From: Vitrella brassicaformis CCMP3155
Taxonomy: Eukaryota; Protista; Chromerida
Assembly (NCBI GenBank): GCA_001179505.1
Contig: CDMY01000297.1
Location: forward strand, 1 to 64,000
DNA length: 64,000 nucleotides
Direction: 5' to 3'
The notes beneath the pieces were generated by a model, which worked only from the letters and a program-made list of their open reading frames with translations, made no database searches and was not told the origin of the DNA. The translations under genes were made by a program, and so were the position numbers. Shown piece after piece: positions 36,410 to 46,700 of the stretch. Each line of letters opens with the position of its first letter. The stretch's first letter is position 1.

Positions 36410-37999
36410 GCCGACCTGTCCCTCTGCAGCAGCCAGCCCTCCTTGTTCTTGATATTGCGATTGATGAGGTCCAGGGGCAGCTCACTCGCAGACCGGGGGT
36501 AAAAATCTGAAGGAGGAAGAAACCAATGAACCAGCAGATCGGGATGTGCTGCTGTTTGTTGGGATATACCTGACGGTTTGTCGGTTCCAACGATGAAGTG
36601 CTGTTTGTCGTCCTGGGCGATCTGGTCCACATTCTCCCACTGCACAAAGCAGCGACATCCTCGTGTGTGCTGCTGACGCGCTATGCTGCATGTGTGTGTG
36701 TCTGTCTTTCTGTTGTGGGTCACCTCGTCCGCTTCAAACAGTGGTTTCTCGAGCTCGTGGACCCCTATCGTGACGACACTCTTCTTGCCGCGCATCGGAC
36801 ACGTGCACGCCACTATTTTCTGAAGGAACGATGACCACCAGCATCATCGTCATCACAACACACACATGTACTGGGTCGGTGGTGGTGGTGTCCCTCCCTC
36901 TCAGGCGGACCGAGAAGAGGCTGCACACGAGCGCGTAAGTGAGGTAGCACAGGACCAGTGCGAGCGACTCCCATTTCGACACCACCCCGTCGGCCAGCGT
37001 CCAGTACAGCATGCCGATCGACAAGCCGTAGAAAAACACATCACGCGCTGCACACACCCACACCCACAGCCACACCCACCCGGACGGACAAACAAAAGCA
37101 ACACGTGAGTGTGTCGTCAGTGTGTGTCGTTGGTTCGCTCACTGACCGAAGGGGCGCCAATCGAGCCGCAGGACACCGTGCTGCGCCAGGAGGGCGCTGA
37201 AGCCGCATATCATCAGCTGACCACACACACACACACATGGCGCACACATGCAAACATGGGAGGCCAGTGGGAGGAGTATATATACCATGTTGAATATCTC
37301 GGAGCCGACGATTGTTCCCGAGCCGACGGCCGAGTGCTCGATGAAGATGGCTATGAAGTTGGTGAACCTGCACACAGATACACACACACTCAGATGGGTC
37401 GGTGGAATGCAGTTCATGCCCTGGATCTCCCTGAGCGTGTGGGCTGGTATGGTGTCTGTCGTTGTGGGTACATTTCAGGCGAGCTGGCACCGATGGCCAT
37501 GAAGGTCGCCCCGGCGACGTCGTCGGGGATCTTGAGCTTGTCACACATAATCTGCAGAGCCGGCACCTGTGCACACACGTCCGTATCCATGACAACAGGG
37601 GGTTAATGGACCATGGCTTGGTCGGGCTTACGAAGTACTCGTCGCACCTGCACGGACACAAAACATGCTTCATACTGCTCCCTCCCTCCCTCCCTCCCTC
37701 CCTCCGTCTGTGTGTGGTGCTTACACGACGGCCAGCGAGTAGAAGATGTAGAGTATGAGGAGCACCCACAGCCACACGCCGAAGTTCCTGACGAAGGCAG
37801 AGTACTCCGGGCACCCCGGCTCAGCTGCAGCTACGCTACCAGCACCTCCCCCGACATCCTGCGCCGTGAGGGTCATGTTGGACACCGGGTGCAGCGTCAG
37901 ATTGTGCGGCACGAAGGCCATCGTCGCCATGTGGCTCATCGATGCCCGCAGATGGGCCGTGCCCAGCCCGTTGGCGAGCGCCGCCAGATGGGAATCCAT
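33263..37999 (-). CDS. NCKX: K+-dependent Na+/Ca2+ exchanger (NCKX/SLC24-like, CaCA superfamily) with PH-like motifs in the central loop; one 300-N gap
   Basis: Alpha-1 repeat CDEYFV...[17 protein letters not shown]...[11 protein letters not shown]. Alpha-2 repeat [28 protein letters not shown]...[27 protein letters not shown]. Also [10 protein letters not shown] and about 11 hydrophobic segments. Confidence 0.93.
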
Positions 38000-38179
38000 C
38001 ACAGCGGCAGGGAGGCCGGACTAAAGGGCGGGGGGTTGGGTGATGGGCTGACTGCCCTCACTGGCGCAGCCAGGCTGTCCAGTGACGTGCTGGTGTGTCC
38101 AATATGGCCAGATCTGGCCTCTTTTCCTCCGCTTCGTAGGATCGTTTTGGCGAGCTTGAGCCTTTTGGGGGTATTATCG

Positions 38180-38359
38180 ATGCCGAGCGTAAGCGGGTAT
38201 TTGAGGCGCGGGCTGGCGCCGTTGTTGGTGCATGACATCGCTGTGGGCTGCCGCATCGGGCTGTACGAGAGGGCCCGCACCTGCAACTACGTGAGAGCAT
38301 GGAAGGAGCCTTGTGGGGGGATGAGCACGGAGATCTATGGCGAGATGGCAAAGGTGCGA

Positions 38360-38395
<36 letters not shown>

Positions 38396-39657
38396 CCATC
38401 CATCCATCCATCCATTCTTCTCTCTCTTATGCGTGTGCAGGGCCACATAGAGTGGGAAGCGGCGCCTCAGTGGACGTCGCCGGCTTCATGGACGGACGAT
38501 AACCCCCTCAAGCCTAGGAGACTCGTCTGGAACTTCACCATGAGCGGGGTGACCCCAATGCACATTGCAGGCCCTCTCCTTCTCTGCAAAAAGTTCTTAT
38601 CTGTCTGTTGCGTGTGTTCTGTGTGCAGTTGAACGAATGTTTGAAGGATCCAAAACCGTACACCCTGCCCAGGCTGCCAAACATACTCGCAGAGATACCG
38701 CCGGGTGAGCCGGGCGACACATCTACAAGCAGTATGGTCATTCCTCTCTCCCTGTCTGACGCAGGTGGCTTCCTGGCCAAGGCGGACTTCCAGAAAGCCT
38801 ACAAGCAGTTGCCGGTGCACCCCGACGATCGGCCCTTCCTGTCCTTCCACATGTCGTCCACTTCCGACTTCCTCTCGTGGCGCGTCCTGCCATTCGGTCT
38901 CAAGACAGGCCCCTCCCTCCTGCTGCGCCACACGGCGGCCATGCAGGCCTTCATGCCATTCGCCACCTACTGCTATGTCGACGACTGGCTCATTGGGGGA
39001 GAAAAGGCTGCAGAGGGACGGGAGGCGGTGTTTGACGAGCGGCGGGTGGCGGAGAACTTCGGCGAGTTCCGGGAGCTGACGGAGGACCTTGGGTGGCCGG
39101 TGCACAAGGTCGTCGAGCCGACACAAGAGCTGGTGGGTGGAGAGAGGGAGAGCGGGAGAGACAGGCGGGGCTTCATTGTTCGGATGTTTGTGTGTGTGGT
39201 CACACAGACGTATTTGGGTTTTGATATCAACACGCGTCTGCGGACCATCCGCATTCCCGACGACAAGTGGCACCGCCTCAAGTGGCGCATCATCGACGCG
39301 CTCCGGTACGGCACACGGACGCAGAGCGGCCGCGGCAAGTGCGACGTGCGCTACATCGACGAGCTCCTCAGCGTGCTCCCCTACTTCGCGCCCTTCTTCC
39401 CCCCATCACTGGTCCCTGAGCTCTTCGTGGGGTGCAGCAGCGTCATGCGCACCGAGACGGAGAGACAGATGGGGGGCGTGCCGGTGTACCACGTGTATGG
39501 CAGCCGCGAGCAGCGGGGTAGCAGGGAGATGTGTGAGCTGAGGGGTGCGTTGGAGGTGGCGTACAGAGATGTGCGGCAGCAGATTGGGTGGGATGAGTAC
39601 ATTAGGGGGGCGGGGAGGAGGGTGGACAGGGACAGGGAGTGGGGGTACCAGACGTGA
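38180..39657 (+). CDS. Stand-alone DIRS/Ngaro-type reverse transcriptase, 5 exons, ~391 aa after splicing (3' end possibly longer)
   Basis: Exons 38180-38353, 38441-38548, 38629-38704, 38765-39132 and 39208-39657 join in frame across GT-AG introns. RT motifs: RRLVWNFTMSGLNE, KADFQKAYKQLPVHPDDRPF, WRVLPFGLKTGP, YVDDWLI, LGWPVHKVVEPTQEL-TYLGFDINT, IRIPDDK. Confidence 0.85.
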
Positions 39658-39699
39658 CAGACGTGACCGAGTGACATGCATCACTTATCATTCAATCAT

Positions 39700-42600
39700 G
39701 TCAATGAATGCAGAAAGTGTCATCCATCCATCCATCCACTCTTCTCACACGTAAGTATGGATCAAGTATGTTCGGGGGCTGTCAGCAGCTGGCACGGCAC
39801 AAGGGTATGCGCTATTCGCGTCAGTCAGTCAGTCTCAGTCACTCTCTTCGCTGGACAGGCAGGCGGGCTCTCTGTTTGTGCAGTTGCATGGTCTGATTAT
39901 CGCGTCCTTACCGCCGCCGCCGCCGGCCACACACACATTGCCGGACGGCCGCGGCAAGTCCGCCCGCGTGGCTCGACACATCGGCATGCTCACCACCGAC
40001 GAGAGGCATATCACCTTTACCTACCGACGGACGGCTGGATGCACACGTCCACACACACGCACACGCATGGATTACGCCACACCCTCTCTCACTCTCTCAC
40101 ACACAGAGCCCACACGAATGAATTCATTCACTCAGTTGTCAGCCAGTCAGTCAGTCAGTCTTCCTCTGTGTTAGTAGAAGCTCCGGATAGAGACAAGGCC
40201 AGCAGGCAGGCAGGCAGTCACGTCGGAGGTGATAAACACCTCCGAACAGAGCGTAGCCATGCCGCCCATGTGAGCAGCGAGAAACCAGGGAGGGAGGGAG
40301 GGACGGGGGGAGGAAACACCGCACCACAAGAAAGAGGTTAGGAGGAAAGGCAGCACTCAGGTTGTTGACTGCCACGCAGATAGAAAGATACACAGATAGA
40401 CCCGCCCCACCCCATCCCACCCACCACAGAGAAAGTGCACACCCACCCACACACGCCCACAGATACAGACAGACAGACACGCACAGATACACTACACCAC
40501 GCCCGCCTACCCGCCCGTCCGTCCGTCCATCCATTCATCGCACTCACTCACGGGAGCTCATAGGAATGCTCGTCTCTCTCTCTCTCCTTCTCTTCCTCTC
40601 GTTTGTAATAATAATAATTCCTCCCCTGTCTGTCTGTGTGGCTGTGTGTGTCAGTCGCGTAGCATGGTGCCTGCCAAGGCGAGCTTCGCTCGGTATGTGG
40701 CATTGATCCATCCATCCAGCTACTATCACACGCGCATCGCATCCACAGCACACCGCCCAGAGGGGGACAGGGAAATACTAAACCACCCAGCCACACGCAC
40801 TCATTCCGAATTCCATCAGTTCGGTCGGTTCGGTTCCATCCATCCATCCATCAATGGCACTGGACACACGGGCCGGACACATCCATTCCATATGCATGAG
40901 ATGACACAGCACTCACTCACTCGGCGTACGTAACACGCAAGCCAGCTCGCGAAGCATGCCTGGCATGGCTGGGCTGGCTGCTCTCCAACCTTGGTTGGCT
41001 CTCTCTGCTCTCCCTCCCTTACAATTACAATTACTTACATACTTACCGTAACCACTCAGAATCACATAAATGCATCCATCCACGCCTCAGTGAGTGGGTG
41101 GGCCGGGCTGGCTTGGCAGTCAGTCATTGTCTCTAAACGAAAGAGACAGATTGTTCCCCCCTGTCTGCCTGTCTGTCTGTATGGGCTGTGTGGAGGTGTG
41201 TATGTGTGAAGGCCTGCAAGGAGGACGTCTACAAACACACCCACCCATCACGCCACCCAGCCAGCCAACCAACCAAATACGTCACACCGCGCCATCCACT
41301 CGCCCGCTCGCTCGCTGTCTGGCAAAAAACTCTCGCACAGCGCCAGCGACGTCTCCTTTGGTATGTACTGTAAGAGTAAGAGCCGAAAAATCGCAGAAAG
41401 TCCGTCGTATGTGTGTAAGCTGACTGAGATGTGCGCACGACGCCGCATCATCTGGTTGAAAAACAGCAATGATTGATGGATGTGGTGCGCGCGTCCGTGC
41501 GGTGTGGTGTGGTGTGGCGTCGAATGGGGCAAGGTCAGCCAGTCAGTAAGTCAGTCAGTAAGTCGGTCGGGCGGAGAGGGACACACGTGTTGATATCCCT
41601 CAGGGCCCATACATTACATGGACAAACAGGTGCACAGATAGATGGATGGAACTGATGTCACTCACGTGAGACCGCCGTCCGTCCGTCGTCCATCCGTTGA
41701 TCAAAACACTCAGCTGGAGTAGTGGGTGGACGGGTACCTACCTACCAGAGTGGTGGGTGGACGGGGCATACAACAGCTGGCCGGATGGGACCTTAAACAG
41801 CACAGGCGGGTCGGTCGGGTGAAGTGAGTAGTCAGTGGGCGGCTGGCTGGGGTCAGAGAGACAGACAGACAGGACCAACGAGTGAGTGGTGTCATGCATT
41901 GTGAGCATTCAAACTCTCACGTACGGCAAATAGATTCCCCTCTCCTCTCTCTCCCTCCTCTCTCTCTCATCTCTCTCATCTCAGATTCCAGGATATATAT
42001 GGGCCGTCACACAAAACCAGGCAGACAGGCAGACAGGCAGGAGATTGCGTGGGCAGCCAACCGACCAGCTAGCCTCACAGAACAACAGACACAGCCGGAC
42101 GGACGGACGGACGGATAGACAGCGCACACGACGACCACAAGAAGCTACATAGAGCATTATGAAGAGGGCACGTACGGTACGCAACGTGTCTGTGTGTGTG
42201 TGTGTGTGTGTGTAGGTCGGGGGCTGTCCCTCTCGGTCAGCTCCGACACACTCACTCCACTCACATACCCTGTTGGCACGTACAGAGAGATAGATTAGAT
42301 TAGATAAGTGTGTGTGTAAGCGAGTAGGAAAGTAAGTGTCGACCGGCCGTTGGTTGGTGCCGGGCACTGCTTGTGCTGCACTTATGGATGGTGTGTACGG
42401 TGGCATGACGCACGAGAGAGAGGAGAGAGGGGAGACGAGAAAGAGGAGAGAGAGACGGCATCGCATCAATCGAATGAAAAGCAAAATGAAAGTTACGGTA
42501 GGTACACACGCACTTACATACTAACTGACCGATTGCTGCTGAGCTGGCTCAGCCGCTGCACTCACTGCAGATGGGTGCAGACAGAGCTCCCGACAGACCA

Positions 42601-43775: not shown

Positions 43776-46700
43776 TCACGGCTGCACCTCCGGTTCGCCA
43801 TATCTCTCCAGGTTGGGCGTCTTGAGTGCCGACGCCAGCACCGGGGTCCCCTGCGGGTTTGTGCTGTCGAGCGACACCAGCTTGCCAGACACCTGACGGA
43901 ACACCTGACGGGTGGCGGCGTCGGACAGGCAGGCAGTGAGCCGCTCGTGGTTGGCGGACACGTCGCGGCACAGCAGCCACAGGGCGGCAAACGCTGAGAA
44001 AGAAATGGACGGACGCATAAAAGGATGGCACACAGAGGACACACACAAAGGGAGACTAACTGACGTACCTTGTTCCTGGAGTTTGATGTCGTCGAGGTGT
44101 TTGGTGAGTATCCCCAGCAGCACCTCGACGGCGCCCTCCTCGCCAGCACGCCGCTTGTACTCCTGCAGAGAGAATGCTGTGCTGCCCCCAGCACCCGGAA
44201 CCTTCTCACTCTGGCACAGTGTTGCGATCAGCCCACAGGCTGCAGACAGATAAGCCACAACAACACACAACACATGTGTCGAACGAATGTCTCGAAGGTT
44301 TGATGCAACCTAAGGTGTCTCTCATGTCACGTACCGAATATGTGGAGCCAGTTGGCATTGGGCCACTGCTTGAGCGCTCGGAGCACCGCACTCACCGCCC
44401 CCGCCTGCCAGGCGGCCTCCAGCGCGCGGCCGTCCTCAGTGCACAGCCGCCACAGCGCCCCGCAGCCCCATATCTGCAGCTCCAAGTCTTGCGGGTAAGA
44501 CTGCAGCGCATCCGCCAACCCGGACACGCCGTTGCCTGCCAAGGCACGCTGCCGGTTGGAGGGCTCGGCGAAAAGGGCGAAGAGGGCGCCGCAGGCCTTC
44601 CAGTGGAGCTCTGCCTTCTTGGTGTGGGTGCGCATGGCCCCCAGGATGGCCTCGACGGCGCCGGCCTTGCCCGCTGCGACGCTGTTGCCGGCGTTGTGCC
44701 TGCAGAGGCTCCAGACGGCGGCGCATCCCCACAGCTGGACGTCGGGGTGGAGCTGCAGCTTCTGCAGGTTGGTCACCACCGTCTGCAGGGTGCCCTCCAG
44801 CCGGCCCTCCTCCTTGGCGCGACGCGTCTCGTCGCTGAAACACATACACCAGATGGCCCCGTAGCCTGCAGTCATTAATTAGCATATCAAAGGGGAGCGA
44901 AGCGGGAGGAATACCGATCGGTCGATGTAAGCAACGTGTGTCTGTCTGTGTCTGTCCTGGGTGTGGCCCACCACCGCCCCGCCCGTCCTTACCGTGCCAC
45001 TGGACATGTGGGTCGTCGGGCCACATCCTGAGCGACTGAGTGAGGATGCGCAGGGCGCCGTGCTGCCCCGCCTGCAGCTGGTTGGGCAGACAGTGACGCG
45101 TCATCGAGAACAACGCCCCACAACCTGCACACCACACCACAGCACATGACACACCAGACGACGGACACACACACACACACACATGACAGACAGACATGGT
45201 CATGTCTGTGTGTGGCTGGCTGATCGGTGTGTGCGGTGCCTCCTCACTGACCCACCCCATATTTGTATCTGCAGGTTGTTGGGGTTGTGTTGGATGGCAT
45301 TGAGGACGGCCTTGATGGACGACGCCTCGCGTGCCCGCGTCTTGTTGGGGGCCACCTGGAAGCAGAGGCTGAACAGGGCGCCGCACCCGATCCACTGCAG
45401 GTCCTCCCTGTCGGCGTGCTTGAGCAGCGCCCGCGTGACGGCCTCGACGGCACCCAGCTGCCCCGCCTGCTCGATCCGCTGCGTGTTGTACTTGCAGATG
45501 CTCCACATCGCCGCGCATCCTGCACTCACACGCCCACATCATCATTGAGACCGGCTCTCGGGTGTGAGATGTGACTGACCTTTGGTCTGGAGGAAGACGT
45601 CGTTAGGGAACCGGTTGATGGCGCTGACGATGGCGCCGAGACCCCTGCTGACGTCGAGGACTTCGTTGCTGCCCTTCTGGAGCAGACGGCTGCGCGAAAA
45701 AAGCTCGGCCAGCCGCAGGCAGCCCTCCAGCTGCGTCGTGCGATCGTCCAGCGCGTAGATCATCGAGTCCACCAAGCGATCAAACGCTGCCTGGAAAATC
45801 AAAACAACAGACACAAGATCAATCAAAGTCGTCCCGACTGATGTGATGTGGTCTGGTCTGGTCTGTCTCACGTACCACTTCGGCCGGTCGGTCCTTTGGC
45901 GGCAGTGCAGGTGACTGTGCCACGGAGTGGCTGCCGGGCGTTTGGCTCCCAGGAGAGACAGAGCCGCCGCCCTGCTGCTGCTGCTGCAACTGCTGTGGCT
46001 GTGGCAGGTGCGCCTGGTGGGGCTGCTGATGCTGCCCCACCAGCTGGCCGGCCACATCCTTGGCCTCTCCTGCCCCTGCCTGCCGGGCCGCCGGGGGCGG
46101 CAAGTTCACAACCGGCGCACTGTTGGCGCCCCTTGCCGGCGTCAGCAGCTGAGCTGTTGTTCCCCTGGCCTGTTGCTGCTGCTGCTGCTGCTGGTGGATT
46201 TGCTGCTGGATTTGCTGGATTTGCTGCTGCTGTTGTTGGATTGGCTGTGGGTGCGCCGCAGCAGGTGGCGGGATGACAGTGGGCGCCCTATAGGGGGATC
46301 TCTGTGGCGGCGGGAAGGTCTGCAGGGGCATGGCTGGTGTGTGTCCACCGGGAGCGGGAGGCAGGGGCAGGGGGCGGCCGCCTGGGTTGGCGGTGCGCGA
46401 GAGGATGGGTGGGGGCGGAGGGGGCTGCCCATGGTTGGTCAGGGTCGTCAGCCCCCTGCCGGCGCCGGGGAACTGGGACTGCGGCAACCCGGGAGTCTTG
46501 CTGCGGGCCAGGAATGGCGATGTCATCGACGACCATGACGTGGCGCTGATGCCTGCACACACAACACAGACAGACGATTGACGGCACATGTGGTTGCGCA
46601 TGGCATGTGTAGTTTGTCCAGCTGGCCCACCTCTGCATAGGTTGGCCACATCTCTGTCGCCGAGTGCCTGGAAGTCAGTCGGCGGCCGGTGCAGCTGCTT

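What the first reader, a model, noticed from the sequence alone, without database searches (positions are those of the whole stretch)
38180..39657. Intron-containing, stand-alone DIRS/Ngaro-type reverse transcriptase: candidate domesticated RT gene
Seen in sequence: a clean ~391-aa spliced ORF with the full RT core and all three catalytic Asp (KADFQKAY; YVDD). It is interrupted by four GT-AG introns at 38354-38440, 38549-38628, 38705-38764 and 39133-39207. Intron 1 carries the same (CA)n/(CATC)n microsatellites as host introns. Introns 3 and 4 (60 and 75 nt) are in frame and insert exactly into conserved RT motifs (PPG|GFLAKAD; PTQEL|TYLGF), so removing them restores the motifs. No tyrosine recombinase, gag, clear RNase H (TDAS motif), methyltransferase or terminal/internal complementary repeats are visible nearby. 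Established: DIRS/Ngaro retroelements replicate via RNA, which is expected to purge spliced introns, and intron-bearing RT genes are exceptional (e.g. Penelope-like elements, rvt genes). Inference: this RT has stopped transposing and is kept as a host gene with an unknown function, unlike the frameshifted accessory genes around it.
Basis: partly seen in the sequence, partly recalled or inferred. Interest (0 to 1): 0.88.

Follow-up and report, generated by a model that had tools for sequence, protein, structure and literature searches.

The report
Host-kept reverse transcriptase gene in Vitrella
The alga Vitrella brassicaformis carries one single-copy, four-intron, expressed gene for a reverse transcriptase that descends from a tyrosine-recombinase (DIRS-like) retrotransposon, has lost every other transposon part, and is kept intact by selection, so it looks like a mobile-element enzyme turned into an ordinary host gene.

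Summary
Exons 38180-38353, 38441-38548, 38629-38704, 38765-39132 and 39208-39657 splice into a 391-aa ORF. It is identical to the public model CEM00706.1 / A0A0G4ESN6 of Vitrella brassicaformis CCMP3155, which is annotated only as an RT-domain protein.

It is a complete RT (fingers, palm, thumb and part of the connection) with all catalytic motifs. It is collinear with the RTs of the genome's own intronless YR retrotransposons across all four intron sites, at 27-35% identity. It ends just before their RNase H domain.

- The gene and its introns are single-copy in the 72.7-Mb genome.
- The window holds no RNase H, recombinase, gag-like ORF or terminal repeats.
- RNA-like contigs skip introns 1-3 and break at intron 4.
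- A metagenome contig carries the same locus with the same downstream flank. There dN/dS is 0.12 (CI 0.06-0.22), the stop is conserved, and an 8-nt deletion sits in intron 4.
- GC3 is 0.83, like the neighbouring host gene.

Limits: only one close orthologue covering exons 4-5, no deep conservation, and no biochemistry. This scan has also noted a single-copy Penelope-type RT gene elsewhere in this genome.

The parts
38180..38353 (+). Exon 1 (58 aa): start codon and N-terminal fingers region
   Evidence: Splice model. Aligns to the N-terminal RT region of YR-element pols. 80 nt of X1 contig record 2 fall here by depth arithmetic.
38354..38440 (+). Intron 1, 87 nt, GT..AG, holds (CA)n and (CATC)n microsatellites
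   Evidence: No RNA depth over it in X1.
38441..38548 (+). Exon 2 (36 aa): RT motifs 1-2 (KPRRLVWNF..SG)
   Evidence: X1 contig record 2 lies on 38439-38547 with 80 and 65 further letters on either side. Alignment.
38549..38628 (+). Intron 2, 80 nt, GT..AG, unique in the genome
   Evidence: Uncovered in X1, present in the DNA contig of X3.
38629..38704 (+). Exon 3 (25 aa plus 1 nt)
   Evidence: The depth of bins 38510-38811 in X1 fits exon-only cover.
38705..38764 (+). Intron 3, 60 nt, in frame, GT..AG
   Evidence: record 3 starts at 38764 and carries 37 extra letters. The acceptor is conserved in L010.
38765..39132 (+). Exon 4 (122 aa): catalytic core, motif A (AKADFQKAY), motif B (LPFGLKTGP), motif C (YVDD), motif D Lys
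   Evidence: Pfam RVT_1 E 7e-10. dN/dS 0.07 against the orthologue. All 4 invariant columns of alignment A1 are kept, and 9 of the 10 near-invariant ones.
39133..39207 (+). Intron 4, 75 nt, in frame, GT..AG, unique in the genome
   Evidence: The orthologue has an 8-nt deletion here, which would break the frame if unspliced. X1 record 4 ends at 39131 with 25 extra letters, and record 5 starts at 39210.
39208..39657 (+). Exon 5 (149 aa plus TGA): motif E (YLGF), thumb, part of the connection, short C-terminal tail; ends where RNase H begins in the elements
   Evidence: stop conserved; one 6-nt in-frame insertion; dN/dS 0.21. X1 and X8 contigs at 39210-39435 and 39305-39462.
37723..38127 (-). First exon and 5' UTR of the divergent Na/Ca-exchanger-like neighbour; its transcript end lies about 50 nt from the RT start codon
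   Evidence: Spliced RNA contigs in X1, X2 and X8 reach 38081-38127. Na_Ca_ex hit on a neighbouring exon.

Best explanation
This is an exapted host gene that descends from the RT domain of a tyrosine-recombinase (DIRS/Ngaro/PAT-like) retrotransposon. An old insertion lost its gag-like ORF, RNase H, C-terminal pol domain, recombinase and repeats. It gained four spliceosomal introns and host-like codon composition. It now sits head-to-head with a Na/Ca-exchanger-like gene and is transcribed at a low level and spliced. The 391-aa product is a stand-alone fingers-palm-thumb-connection RT. Most likely it is still a working polymerase: it would bind a primed template and use the motif A Asp and the YVDD pair for metal-dependent DNA synthesis. 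Having no RNase H of its own, it would leave RNA:DNA hybrids for host enzymes. Shown here: anatomy, single copy, splicing, purifying selection at a syntenic locus, RT fold, and retained catalytic residues. Inferred: polymerase activity. Guessed: the cellular role, for which my first choice is a host RT function comparable to rvt-type cellular RT genes or to control of retroelements.
For: The gene model equals the public annotation. It is single-copy at DNA and protein level, and the introns are unique. It is collinear with intronless YR-element RTs across all four junctions. No other element part and no terminal repeats are present. RNA-like contigs skip introns 1-3 and break at intron 4, while the DNA run is collinear. 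The orthologous contig L010 shares 1.7 kb of downstream flank. On it dN/dS is 0.12 (CI 0.06-0.22) and differences by codon position are 10/5/31. There is one in-frame indel in 818 coding nt against 32 indels in 1802 noncoding nt (Poisson p = 8e-6). The stop is conserved and a frame-breaking deletion is confined to intron 4. GC3 is 0.83, equal to the neighbouring host exon, against 0.56-0.69 in YR-element pols. The AF2 model has pLDDT 78, and its top PDB matches are the CaMV, MMLV, Ty3, HERV-K and HIV RTs (E 1e-15 to 1e-11). 13 of 14 invariant or near-invariant RT columns are retained despite a terminal branch of 1.39 against a median of 0.51.
Against: Only one orthologue is known. It is close (about 94% aa identity) and covers exons 4-5 only. 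No relative closer than 43% identity over the RT core turned up among 1.8 billion cluster representatives, so there is no evidence of deep conservation. Expression is low, and the 5' and 3' transcript ends were not captured. The runs are only guessed to be RNA, although they show spliced neighbour genes. YR elements in this genome are themselves low-copy and divergent, so single copy alone is weak evidence. Synonymous divergence (0.17) exceeds the divergence of the flanking noncoding DNA (about 0.05-0.10), and this is unexplained. No activity data exist.
Confidence: 0.7

Rival explanations
1. It is a domesticated gene, but polymerase activity is not what selection keeps. The truncated RT would act as a nucleic-acid-binding protein or as a dominant-negative partner. 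It would bind the RT or template of the resident YR retrotransposons and block their replication, as other truncated element proteins restrict their relatives.
For: It lacks RNase H and every other replication part. The genome's YR elements are few and divergent, which fits tight control. LTR-type RTs such as Ty3 work as dimers (established knowledge; structure 4ol8 is among the top fold matches).
Against: All catalytic and dNTP-binding motif residues survive a very long branch. The core exon has the lowest dN/dS (0.07), and the steric-gate Tyr changes only to Phe in the orthologue. A pure binder would not need these. The protein is only 27-35% identical to the resident elements' RTs, which makes specific heterodimers less likely.
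Confidence: 0.17
2. It is a decaying relic of a DIRS-like insertion with no function. It is transcribed only because it sits next to an active bidirectional promoter, and the introns and ORF are kept by chance.
For: RNA depth is low. There is no deep orthologue. Another note of this scan reports a host-style intron inside a Copia pol in this genome, so introns can arise in element DNA here.
Against: dN/dS is 0.12 with p = 4e-11 against neutrality. Third-position bias is strong, there are no frame-breaking indels in 818 nt while the flanks carry one per 56 nt, and the stop is conserved. Codon composition is host-like.
Confidence: 0.06
3. It is part of a still-mobile, intron-retaining retroelement (as in Penelope-like elements), or a non-autonomous element mobilised in trans.
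For: Some retroelement groups do retain introns (established for Penelope-like elements). Intact YR elements exist in the genome that could act in trans.
Against: There is exactly one copy, no repeats at the borders, and the same flank in the orthologous contig. The introns are unique sequences. The gene is tightly packed between host genes.
Confidence: 0.03

Closest known systems
RT domain of tyrosine-recombinase retrotransposons (order DIRS: DIRS1, Ngaro, PAT-like, VIPER), including the Vitrella copies on contigs C499 and C1057
   Same: The RT sequence clade is the same (SH-aLRT 99). It is collinear from the N-terminal fingers to the connection region, and the motifs match (FxAKxD, LPFG, Y[VIL]DDW). 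The nearest database and Atlas neighbours carry RT plus RNase H plus a Dam-like methyltransferase.
   Different: It has no RNase H, methyltransferase, YR, gag-like ORF or repeats. It is single-copy, has four introns and host-like GC3, is under host-level purifying selection, and sits on a long branch.
rvt genes (single-copy RT-related cellular genes of fungi, plants, protists and some bacteria; Gladyshev and Arkhipova 2011, cited from memory)
   Same: Both are stand-alone RT genes kept as single-copy host genes under purifying selection, with no endonuclease or integrase and no known cellular role.
   Different: rvt forms its own RT clade with characteristic N- and C-terminal extensions and is not derived from YR or LTR-type elements. 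This gene nests within the YR-element RTs. No rvt reference was included in my tree.
Retroelement-derived domesticated genes of vertebrates (PEG10, RTL and SIRH genes, GIN1, NYNRIN; reviewed in PMC3670739)
   Same: The route is the same: a multicopy intronless element becomes a single-copy, often intron-bearing, gene under selection at a fixed locus.
   Different: Those genes keep gag, protease, RNase H or integrase parts, not the polymerase. Here the RT itself is kept, with its catalytic residues.
Single-copy, intron-rich, endonuclease-less Penelope-type RT gene in the same genome (scan note s1-197144)
   Same: Same organism and same pattern: an RT stripped of element hallmarks, intron-bearing, single-copy and expressed.
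   Different: It comes from a different RT lineage (Penelope or telomerase-like). No orthologue was reported for it, whereas this gene has a syntenic orthologue with a measured dN/dS.

Membership tests
Reverse transcriptase (Pfam RVT_1, right-hand polymerase) | Profile match above the curated cut-off | tested here: met
   PF00078: 38.0-39.5 bits against a cut-off of 29.6.
Reverse transcriptase (Pfam RVT_1, right-hand polymerase) | Catalytic Asp of motif A and YxDD of motif C, plus motif B and the fingers Lys/Arg | tested here: met
   D127, Y190-V-D192-D193, LPFGLKTGP and KPRR are present. All 4 invariant and 9 of 10 near-invariant columns are kept, and they are conserved in the orthologue.
Reverse transcriptase (Pfam RVT_1, right-hand polymerase) | Fingers-palm-thumb fold | tested here: met
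   AF2 pLDDT 78 and pTM 0.76. Foldseek top hits are the CaMV, MMLV, Ty3, HERV-K and HIV RTs, E 1e-15 to 1e-11.
Reverse transcriptase (Pfam RVT_1, right-hand polymerase) | RNA-dependent DNA polymerase activity | not testable with these tools
   Needs a biochemical assay.
YR (DIRS/Ngaro/PAT-like) retrotransposon, as a mobile element | RT groups with the RTs of YR-encoding elements | tested here: met
   It lies in a clade of 66 rows (SH-aLRT 99) together with the four Vitrella DIRS-like pol copies, two of which carry a Phage_integrase ORF. This clade is separate from the Vitrella LTR-type RTs. No named DIRS1, Ngaro, VIPER or PAT references were available.
YR (DIRS/Ngaro/PAT-like) retrotransposon, as a mobile element | RNase H domain fused to the RT | tested here: not met
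   The ORF stops where RNase H starts in the relatives. tblastn finds none in the window. The stop is conserved in the orthologue.
YR (DIRS/Ngaro/PAT-like) retrotransposon, as a mobile element | Tyrosine recombinase ORF | tested here: not met
   tblastn with both Vitrella YR ORFs gives a best E of 0.57 in 64 kb.
YR (DIRS/Ngaro/PAT-like) retrotransposon, as a mobile element | Terminal repeats or internal complementary region | tested here: not met
   Only microsatellite repeats occur within 4 kb on either side.
YR (DIRS/Ngaro/PAT-like) retrotransposon, as a mobile element | Several copies, intronless coding sequence | tested here: not met
   One copy with four introns.
Domesticated (exapted) transposable-element gene | Single copy and loss of mobility hallmarks | tested here: met
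Domesticated (exapted) transposable-element gene | Orthologue at the same locus in another lineage | tested here: met
   L010 aligns to window 38717-41384, including 1.7 kb of downstream flank. It is one lineage only, a close relative, and the upstream part is missing.
Domesticated (exapted) transposable-element gene | Purifying selection between orthologues | tested here: met
   dN/dS 0.12, CI 0.06-0.22, p = 4e-11.
Domesticated (exapted) transposable-element gene | Expression as a spliced mRNA | tested here: met
   X1 contigs break at the exon borders, and the depth arithmetic fits exon-only cover for introns 1-3. The evidence is Logan contigs only and the RNA label is a guess. The same runs also splice the neighbour gene.
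Domesticated (exapted) transposable-element gene | Conservation over long evolutionary time | tested here: not met
   No relative above 43% core identity in the exhaustive search. Nothing turned up in the JGI metagenomes.
rvt cellular RT genes | Membership of the rvt RT clade with its terminal extensions | not tested
   No rvt reference sequence was at hand. Placement inside the YR-element clade argues against it.
Penelope-like elements | PLE-type RT, with or without a GIY-YIG endonuclease | not tested
   No PLE sequence was included. The nearest neighbours by sequence and by structure are DIRS-like and LTR-type RTs.

The most novel reading that the evidence does not exclude
This would be the first cellular reverse transcriptase gene derived from a tyrosine-recombinase (DIRS-like) retrotransposon. 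It would be catalytically active, free of RNase H, and doing a host job in a chromerid alga. Together with the Penelope-type RT gene in the same genome, it would point to a lineage that repeatedly recruits RTs for cellular use, such as defence or template-directed DNA synthesis.
Probability: 0.45. Interest if true: 0.8.

Novelty: new variant of a known kind. Interest (0 to 1): 0.7.

Why it matters
Outside telomerase, Prp8 and the rvt genes, eukaryotic host genes that keep a retroelement's polymerase, rather than its gag, protease or integrase, are very rare. I know of none from the DIRS/YR order, and four full-text searches found none. This case comes with an annotated model, transcript support and a measured dN/dS, so it can be tested directly by expressing the protein, mutating YVDD and knocking the gene out. 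Vitrella is a free-living relative of apicomplexan parasites. Together with the Penelope-type RT gene noted elsewhere in its genome, this suggests that cellular RT activity may be a recurrent feature of the lineage. The scope is limited for now: conservation is shown only within Vitrella-like organisms, and the function is unknown.

Tried and rejected
- Word-indexed protein search with the 342-aa read-through: no hit. The cluster representative is 159 aa, outside the length range.
- The same search with exon 5 found only P0001.
- JGI metagenome scan with P0151: 43 pattern matches, none a relative.
- Introner hypothesis: introns 2 and 4 match nothing else in the genome.
- Hidden RNase H, YR or gag exons in the window: tblastn gave only chance-level hits.
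- Terminal repeats: only microsatellites.
- A possible GTGAC donor overlapping the stop: rejected. The orthologue keeps the TGA, reads GTGAT there, and has an 8-nt deletion immediately after it.
- Literature: searches for Vitrella with DIRS, Vitrella with reverse transcriptase, and domesticated DIRS RT with introns gave no description of this gene. The Chlamydomonas comparative paper only lists PAT-like DIRS elements.
- Scan notes around this place: none.
- The first 58 nt of L010 are an inverted copy of intron 4. I treated this as an assembly artefact and excluded it.
- No complex prediction was run, because no binding claim is made.

Full report
**Source and gene model.** The window is contig C297 of a 72.7-Mb, 1064-contig assembly. 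The protein it encodes at this place is on record as CEM00706.1 / UniRef A0A0G4ESN6 of Vitrella brassicaformis CCMP3155. Joining 38180-38353, 38441-38548, 38629-38704, 38765-39132 and 39208-39657 gives a 1176-nt CDS of 391 aa plus TGA. All four introns are GT..AG and measure 87, 80, 60 and 75 nt. This product is identical to the public 391-aa model P0151. The databases call it only an unnamed or RT-domain protein.

**It is a real RT, and the introns interrupt it.**
- Pfam RVT_1 hits exon 4 (E 7e-10) and the whole protein (E 2e-9), above the curated cut-off.
- blastp against uninterrupted pol ORFs of the same genome (contigs C33, C1057, C499) gives E 2e-21 to 5e-17 at 27-35% identity. There are no gaps at any junction: EMAK|GHIEW aligns with LAEKGWIEE, MSG|LNEC with ISGVNAC, PPG|GFLAKAD with KRGFYQAKLD, and QEL|TYLGF with QLVSFVGF.
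- The alignment runs from the N-terminal fingers to the W-rich connection segment. It stops just before the TDAS RNase H motif of the elements.
- An AlphaFold2 model built on 40 aligned RTs has pLDDT 78 and pTM 0.76. It is confident for residues 10-280 and weak for 312-346 and the last 11 residues.
- Foldseek places the model with the solved RTs of CaMV, MMLV, Ty3, HERV-K and HIV (E 1e-15 to 1e-11).
- The protein keeps all four invariant columns of that alignment (D127, L145, Y190, D192). It also keeps nine of ten near-invariant ones, including D193, LPFGL and P169.

**Lineage.** The genome has at least 82 RVT_1 matches. Only about eight loci resemble the DIRS-like pol, and these are 33-46% identical to each other. 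The copies on C499 and C1057 have the order ORF1, RT-RNase H pol, then a Phage_integrase ORF, so they are tyrosine-recombinase retrotransposons.

In an exhaustive phmmer search of 1.8 billion cluster representatives, every hit but one is an RT-core match of E 1e-10 or weaker at 30-43% identity. The longer hits show RT plus RNase H plus a Dam-like or PCIF1-like methyltransferase, which is the DIRS architecture. The Atlas's structural neighbours include clusters with RVT_1, Dam and RT_RNaseH domains.

In a maximum-likelihood tree (79 rows, 211 columns, LG+G4, quick search) the gene lies inside a clade with SH-aLRT 99. That clade holds the four Vitrella DIRS-like pol copies and the DIRS-like hits, and it is separate from four Vitrella LTR-type RTs. 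Its exact sister is unresolved. Its terminal branch is 1.39 against a median of 0.51. No named DIRS1, Ngaro, VIPER, PAT, PLE or rvt references were available, so finer assignment is open.

**Not a mobile element.**
- The whole locus, exon 4, exon 5 and introns 2 and 4 each match only themselves in the genome.
- tblastn with RNase H, C-terminal pol, YR and ORF1 proteins of the resident elements finds only chance hits in the 64-kb window.
- Repeats within 4 kb on either side are all microsatellites.
- Upstream lies a divergently transcribed Na/Ca-exchanger-like gene. Its spliced RNA contigs reach 38081-38127, about 50 nt from the RT start codon.
- Downstream lies an abundantly transcribed stretch, followed by ARM-repeat exons on the minus strand.

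**Expression and splicing.** One call of read laying used Logan contigs of four runs.

Run X3 behaves as DNA. One contig is collinear over 38429-40569, introns included.

Runs X1, X2 and X8 behave as RNA, because their contigs skip the neighbour gene's introns. In X1 four low-depth contigs lie on the RT:
- Record 2 (254 nt) lies on 38439-47, that is exon 2, with 80 and 65 further letters at its ends.
- Record 3 lies on 38764-39009 with 37 further letters.
- Record 4 lies on 38985-39131 with 25 further letters.
- Record 5 lies on 39210-39435.

The tool did not list the joints; microsatellite joints filled the table. The bin depths, however, are reproduced to two decimals only if the extra letters lie on the adjacent exons and introns 1-3 carry no depth. 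For example, 5.9 x 80/151 = 3.13 for bin 38208-38358, and 1.25 + 1.83 + 1.41 = 4.49 for bin 38661-38811.

Intron 4 cannot be judged by depth because a GA-rich stretch attracts foreign contigs. The contigs do break at its two borders. Depth is about 5, against 25 for the neighbour. The 5' end and the last 220 nt of the CDS are not covered, so the transcript ends remain unknown.

**Orthologue and selection.** The single close hit, P0001 (159 aa), is an ORF on a 2738-nt contig of ENA metagenome assembly ERZ893895 (L010). L010 aligns to window 38717-41384, from the end of intron 3 to 1.7 kb past the stop, so it is the same locus in a related lineage.
- Exon 4 has 25 mismatches and no gap.
- Intron 4 keeps GT..AG but has an 8-nt deletion. 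This would shift the frame if unspliced, and it explains why the metagenome gene caller split the ORF.
- Exon 5 has 21 mismatches and one 6-nt in-frame insertion.
- The TGA is conserved, and an 8-nt deletion follows it directly.
- Nei-Gojobori counts over 271 codons are 14 nonsynonymous and 32 synonymous differences. This gives dN 0.023, dS 0.19 and dN/dS 0.12, with a bootstrap CI of 0.06-0.22 and a binomial p of 4e-11.
- By exon, dN/dS is 0.07 for exon 4 and 0.21 for exon 5. Differences by codon position are 10/5/31.
- Noncoding DNA has 32 indel events in 1802 nt. Coding DNA has one in-frame event in 818 nt (Poisson p = 8e-6).
- The steric-gate Tyr of motif A is Phe in the orthologue, a swap common among active RTs.
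- GC3 is 0.83, the same as the first exon of the neighbouring host gene. The YR-element pols have 0.56-0.69.

**Reading.** Purifying selection between orthologous, fixed, single-copy loci cannot come from transposition and points to a host-level function. The catalytic motifs survive a long branch, and constraint is strongest on the catalytic exon. Both observations favour a working polymerase over a mere binder. Lacking RNase H, it would leave RNA:DNA hybrids unless host enzymes act. What it does in the cell is not known. I rank a cellular RT role first, an inhibitor of resident YR elements second, and a neutral relic or a mobile element last.

**Limits.**
- There is one orthologue, it is close, and it covers exons 4-5 only.
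- No deeper homologue was found.
- The RNA evidence rests on contigs of runs whose type is guessed.
- Synonymous divergence exceeds flanking noncoding divergence, and this is unexplained.

**Context from this scan.** Another note reports a single-copy, intron-rich Penelope-type RT gene in this genome, and a further note reports a host-style intron in a Copia pol. I did not re-test either.

Noticed in passing
window 37000-38127, minus strand: A Na/Ca-exchanger-like gene is transcribed divergently from the RT. Its spliced RNA contigs end at 38081-38127, about 50 nt from the RT ATG at 38180, which suggests a shared bidirectional promoter.
   Followed up: partly
window 39677-41500 and beyond: This stretch is rich in microsatellites. 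In runs X1, X2 and X8 it is covered by long unspliced contigs at depths of 25-267, far above the RT. It is 90-95% conserved in the orthologous contig. Which gene or RNA it belongs to is unknown.
   Followed up: no
L010 vs window 38717-41384: Synonymous divergence in the RT exons (pS 0.17) is higher than the mismatch rate of intron 4 and of the first 440 nt after the stop (about 0.05). Either the flanks are constrained or GC3-rich codons mutate fast.
   Followed up: no
L010:1-58: The first 58 nt of the metagenome contig are an inverted copy of intron 4 (window 39204-39147). This is probably an assembly artefact at the contig end.
   Followed up: no
L011 (G000:C499:1-9000) and L012 (G000:C1057:36000-45999): Two apparently intact YR retrotransposons have the order ORF1, RT-RNase H pol (881 and 628 aa open frames), then a Phage_integrase ORF. 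They are only about 39% identical to each other. DIRS-like elements in this genome are few and old-looking.
   Followed up: partly
window 38608-39657: Introns 3 and 4 are in frame and stop-free in this strain. An intron-blind ORF caller therefore sees one 349-aa ORF with two insertions inside RT motifs. In the orthologue the 8-nt deletion in intron 4 splits it into two overlapping ORFs.
   Followed up: yes
window 43779-44875, minus strand: Exons with weak ARM-repeat matches (ZER1-like, LRRK2 ARM, ARMC5), probably the next gene downstream.
   Followed up: no
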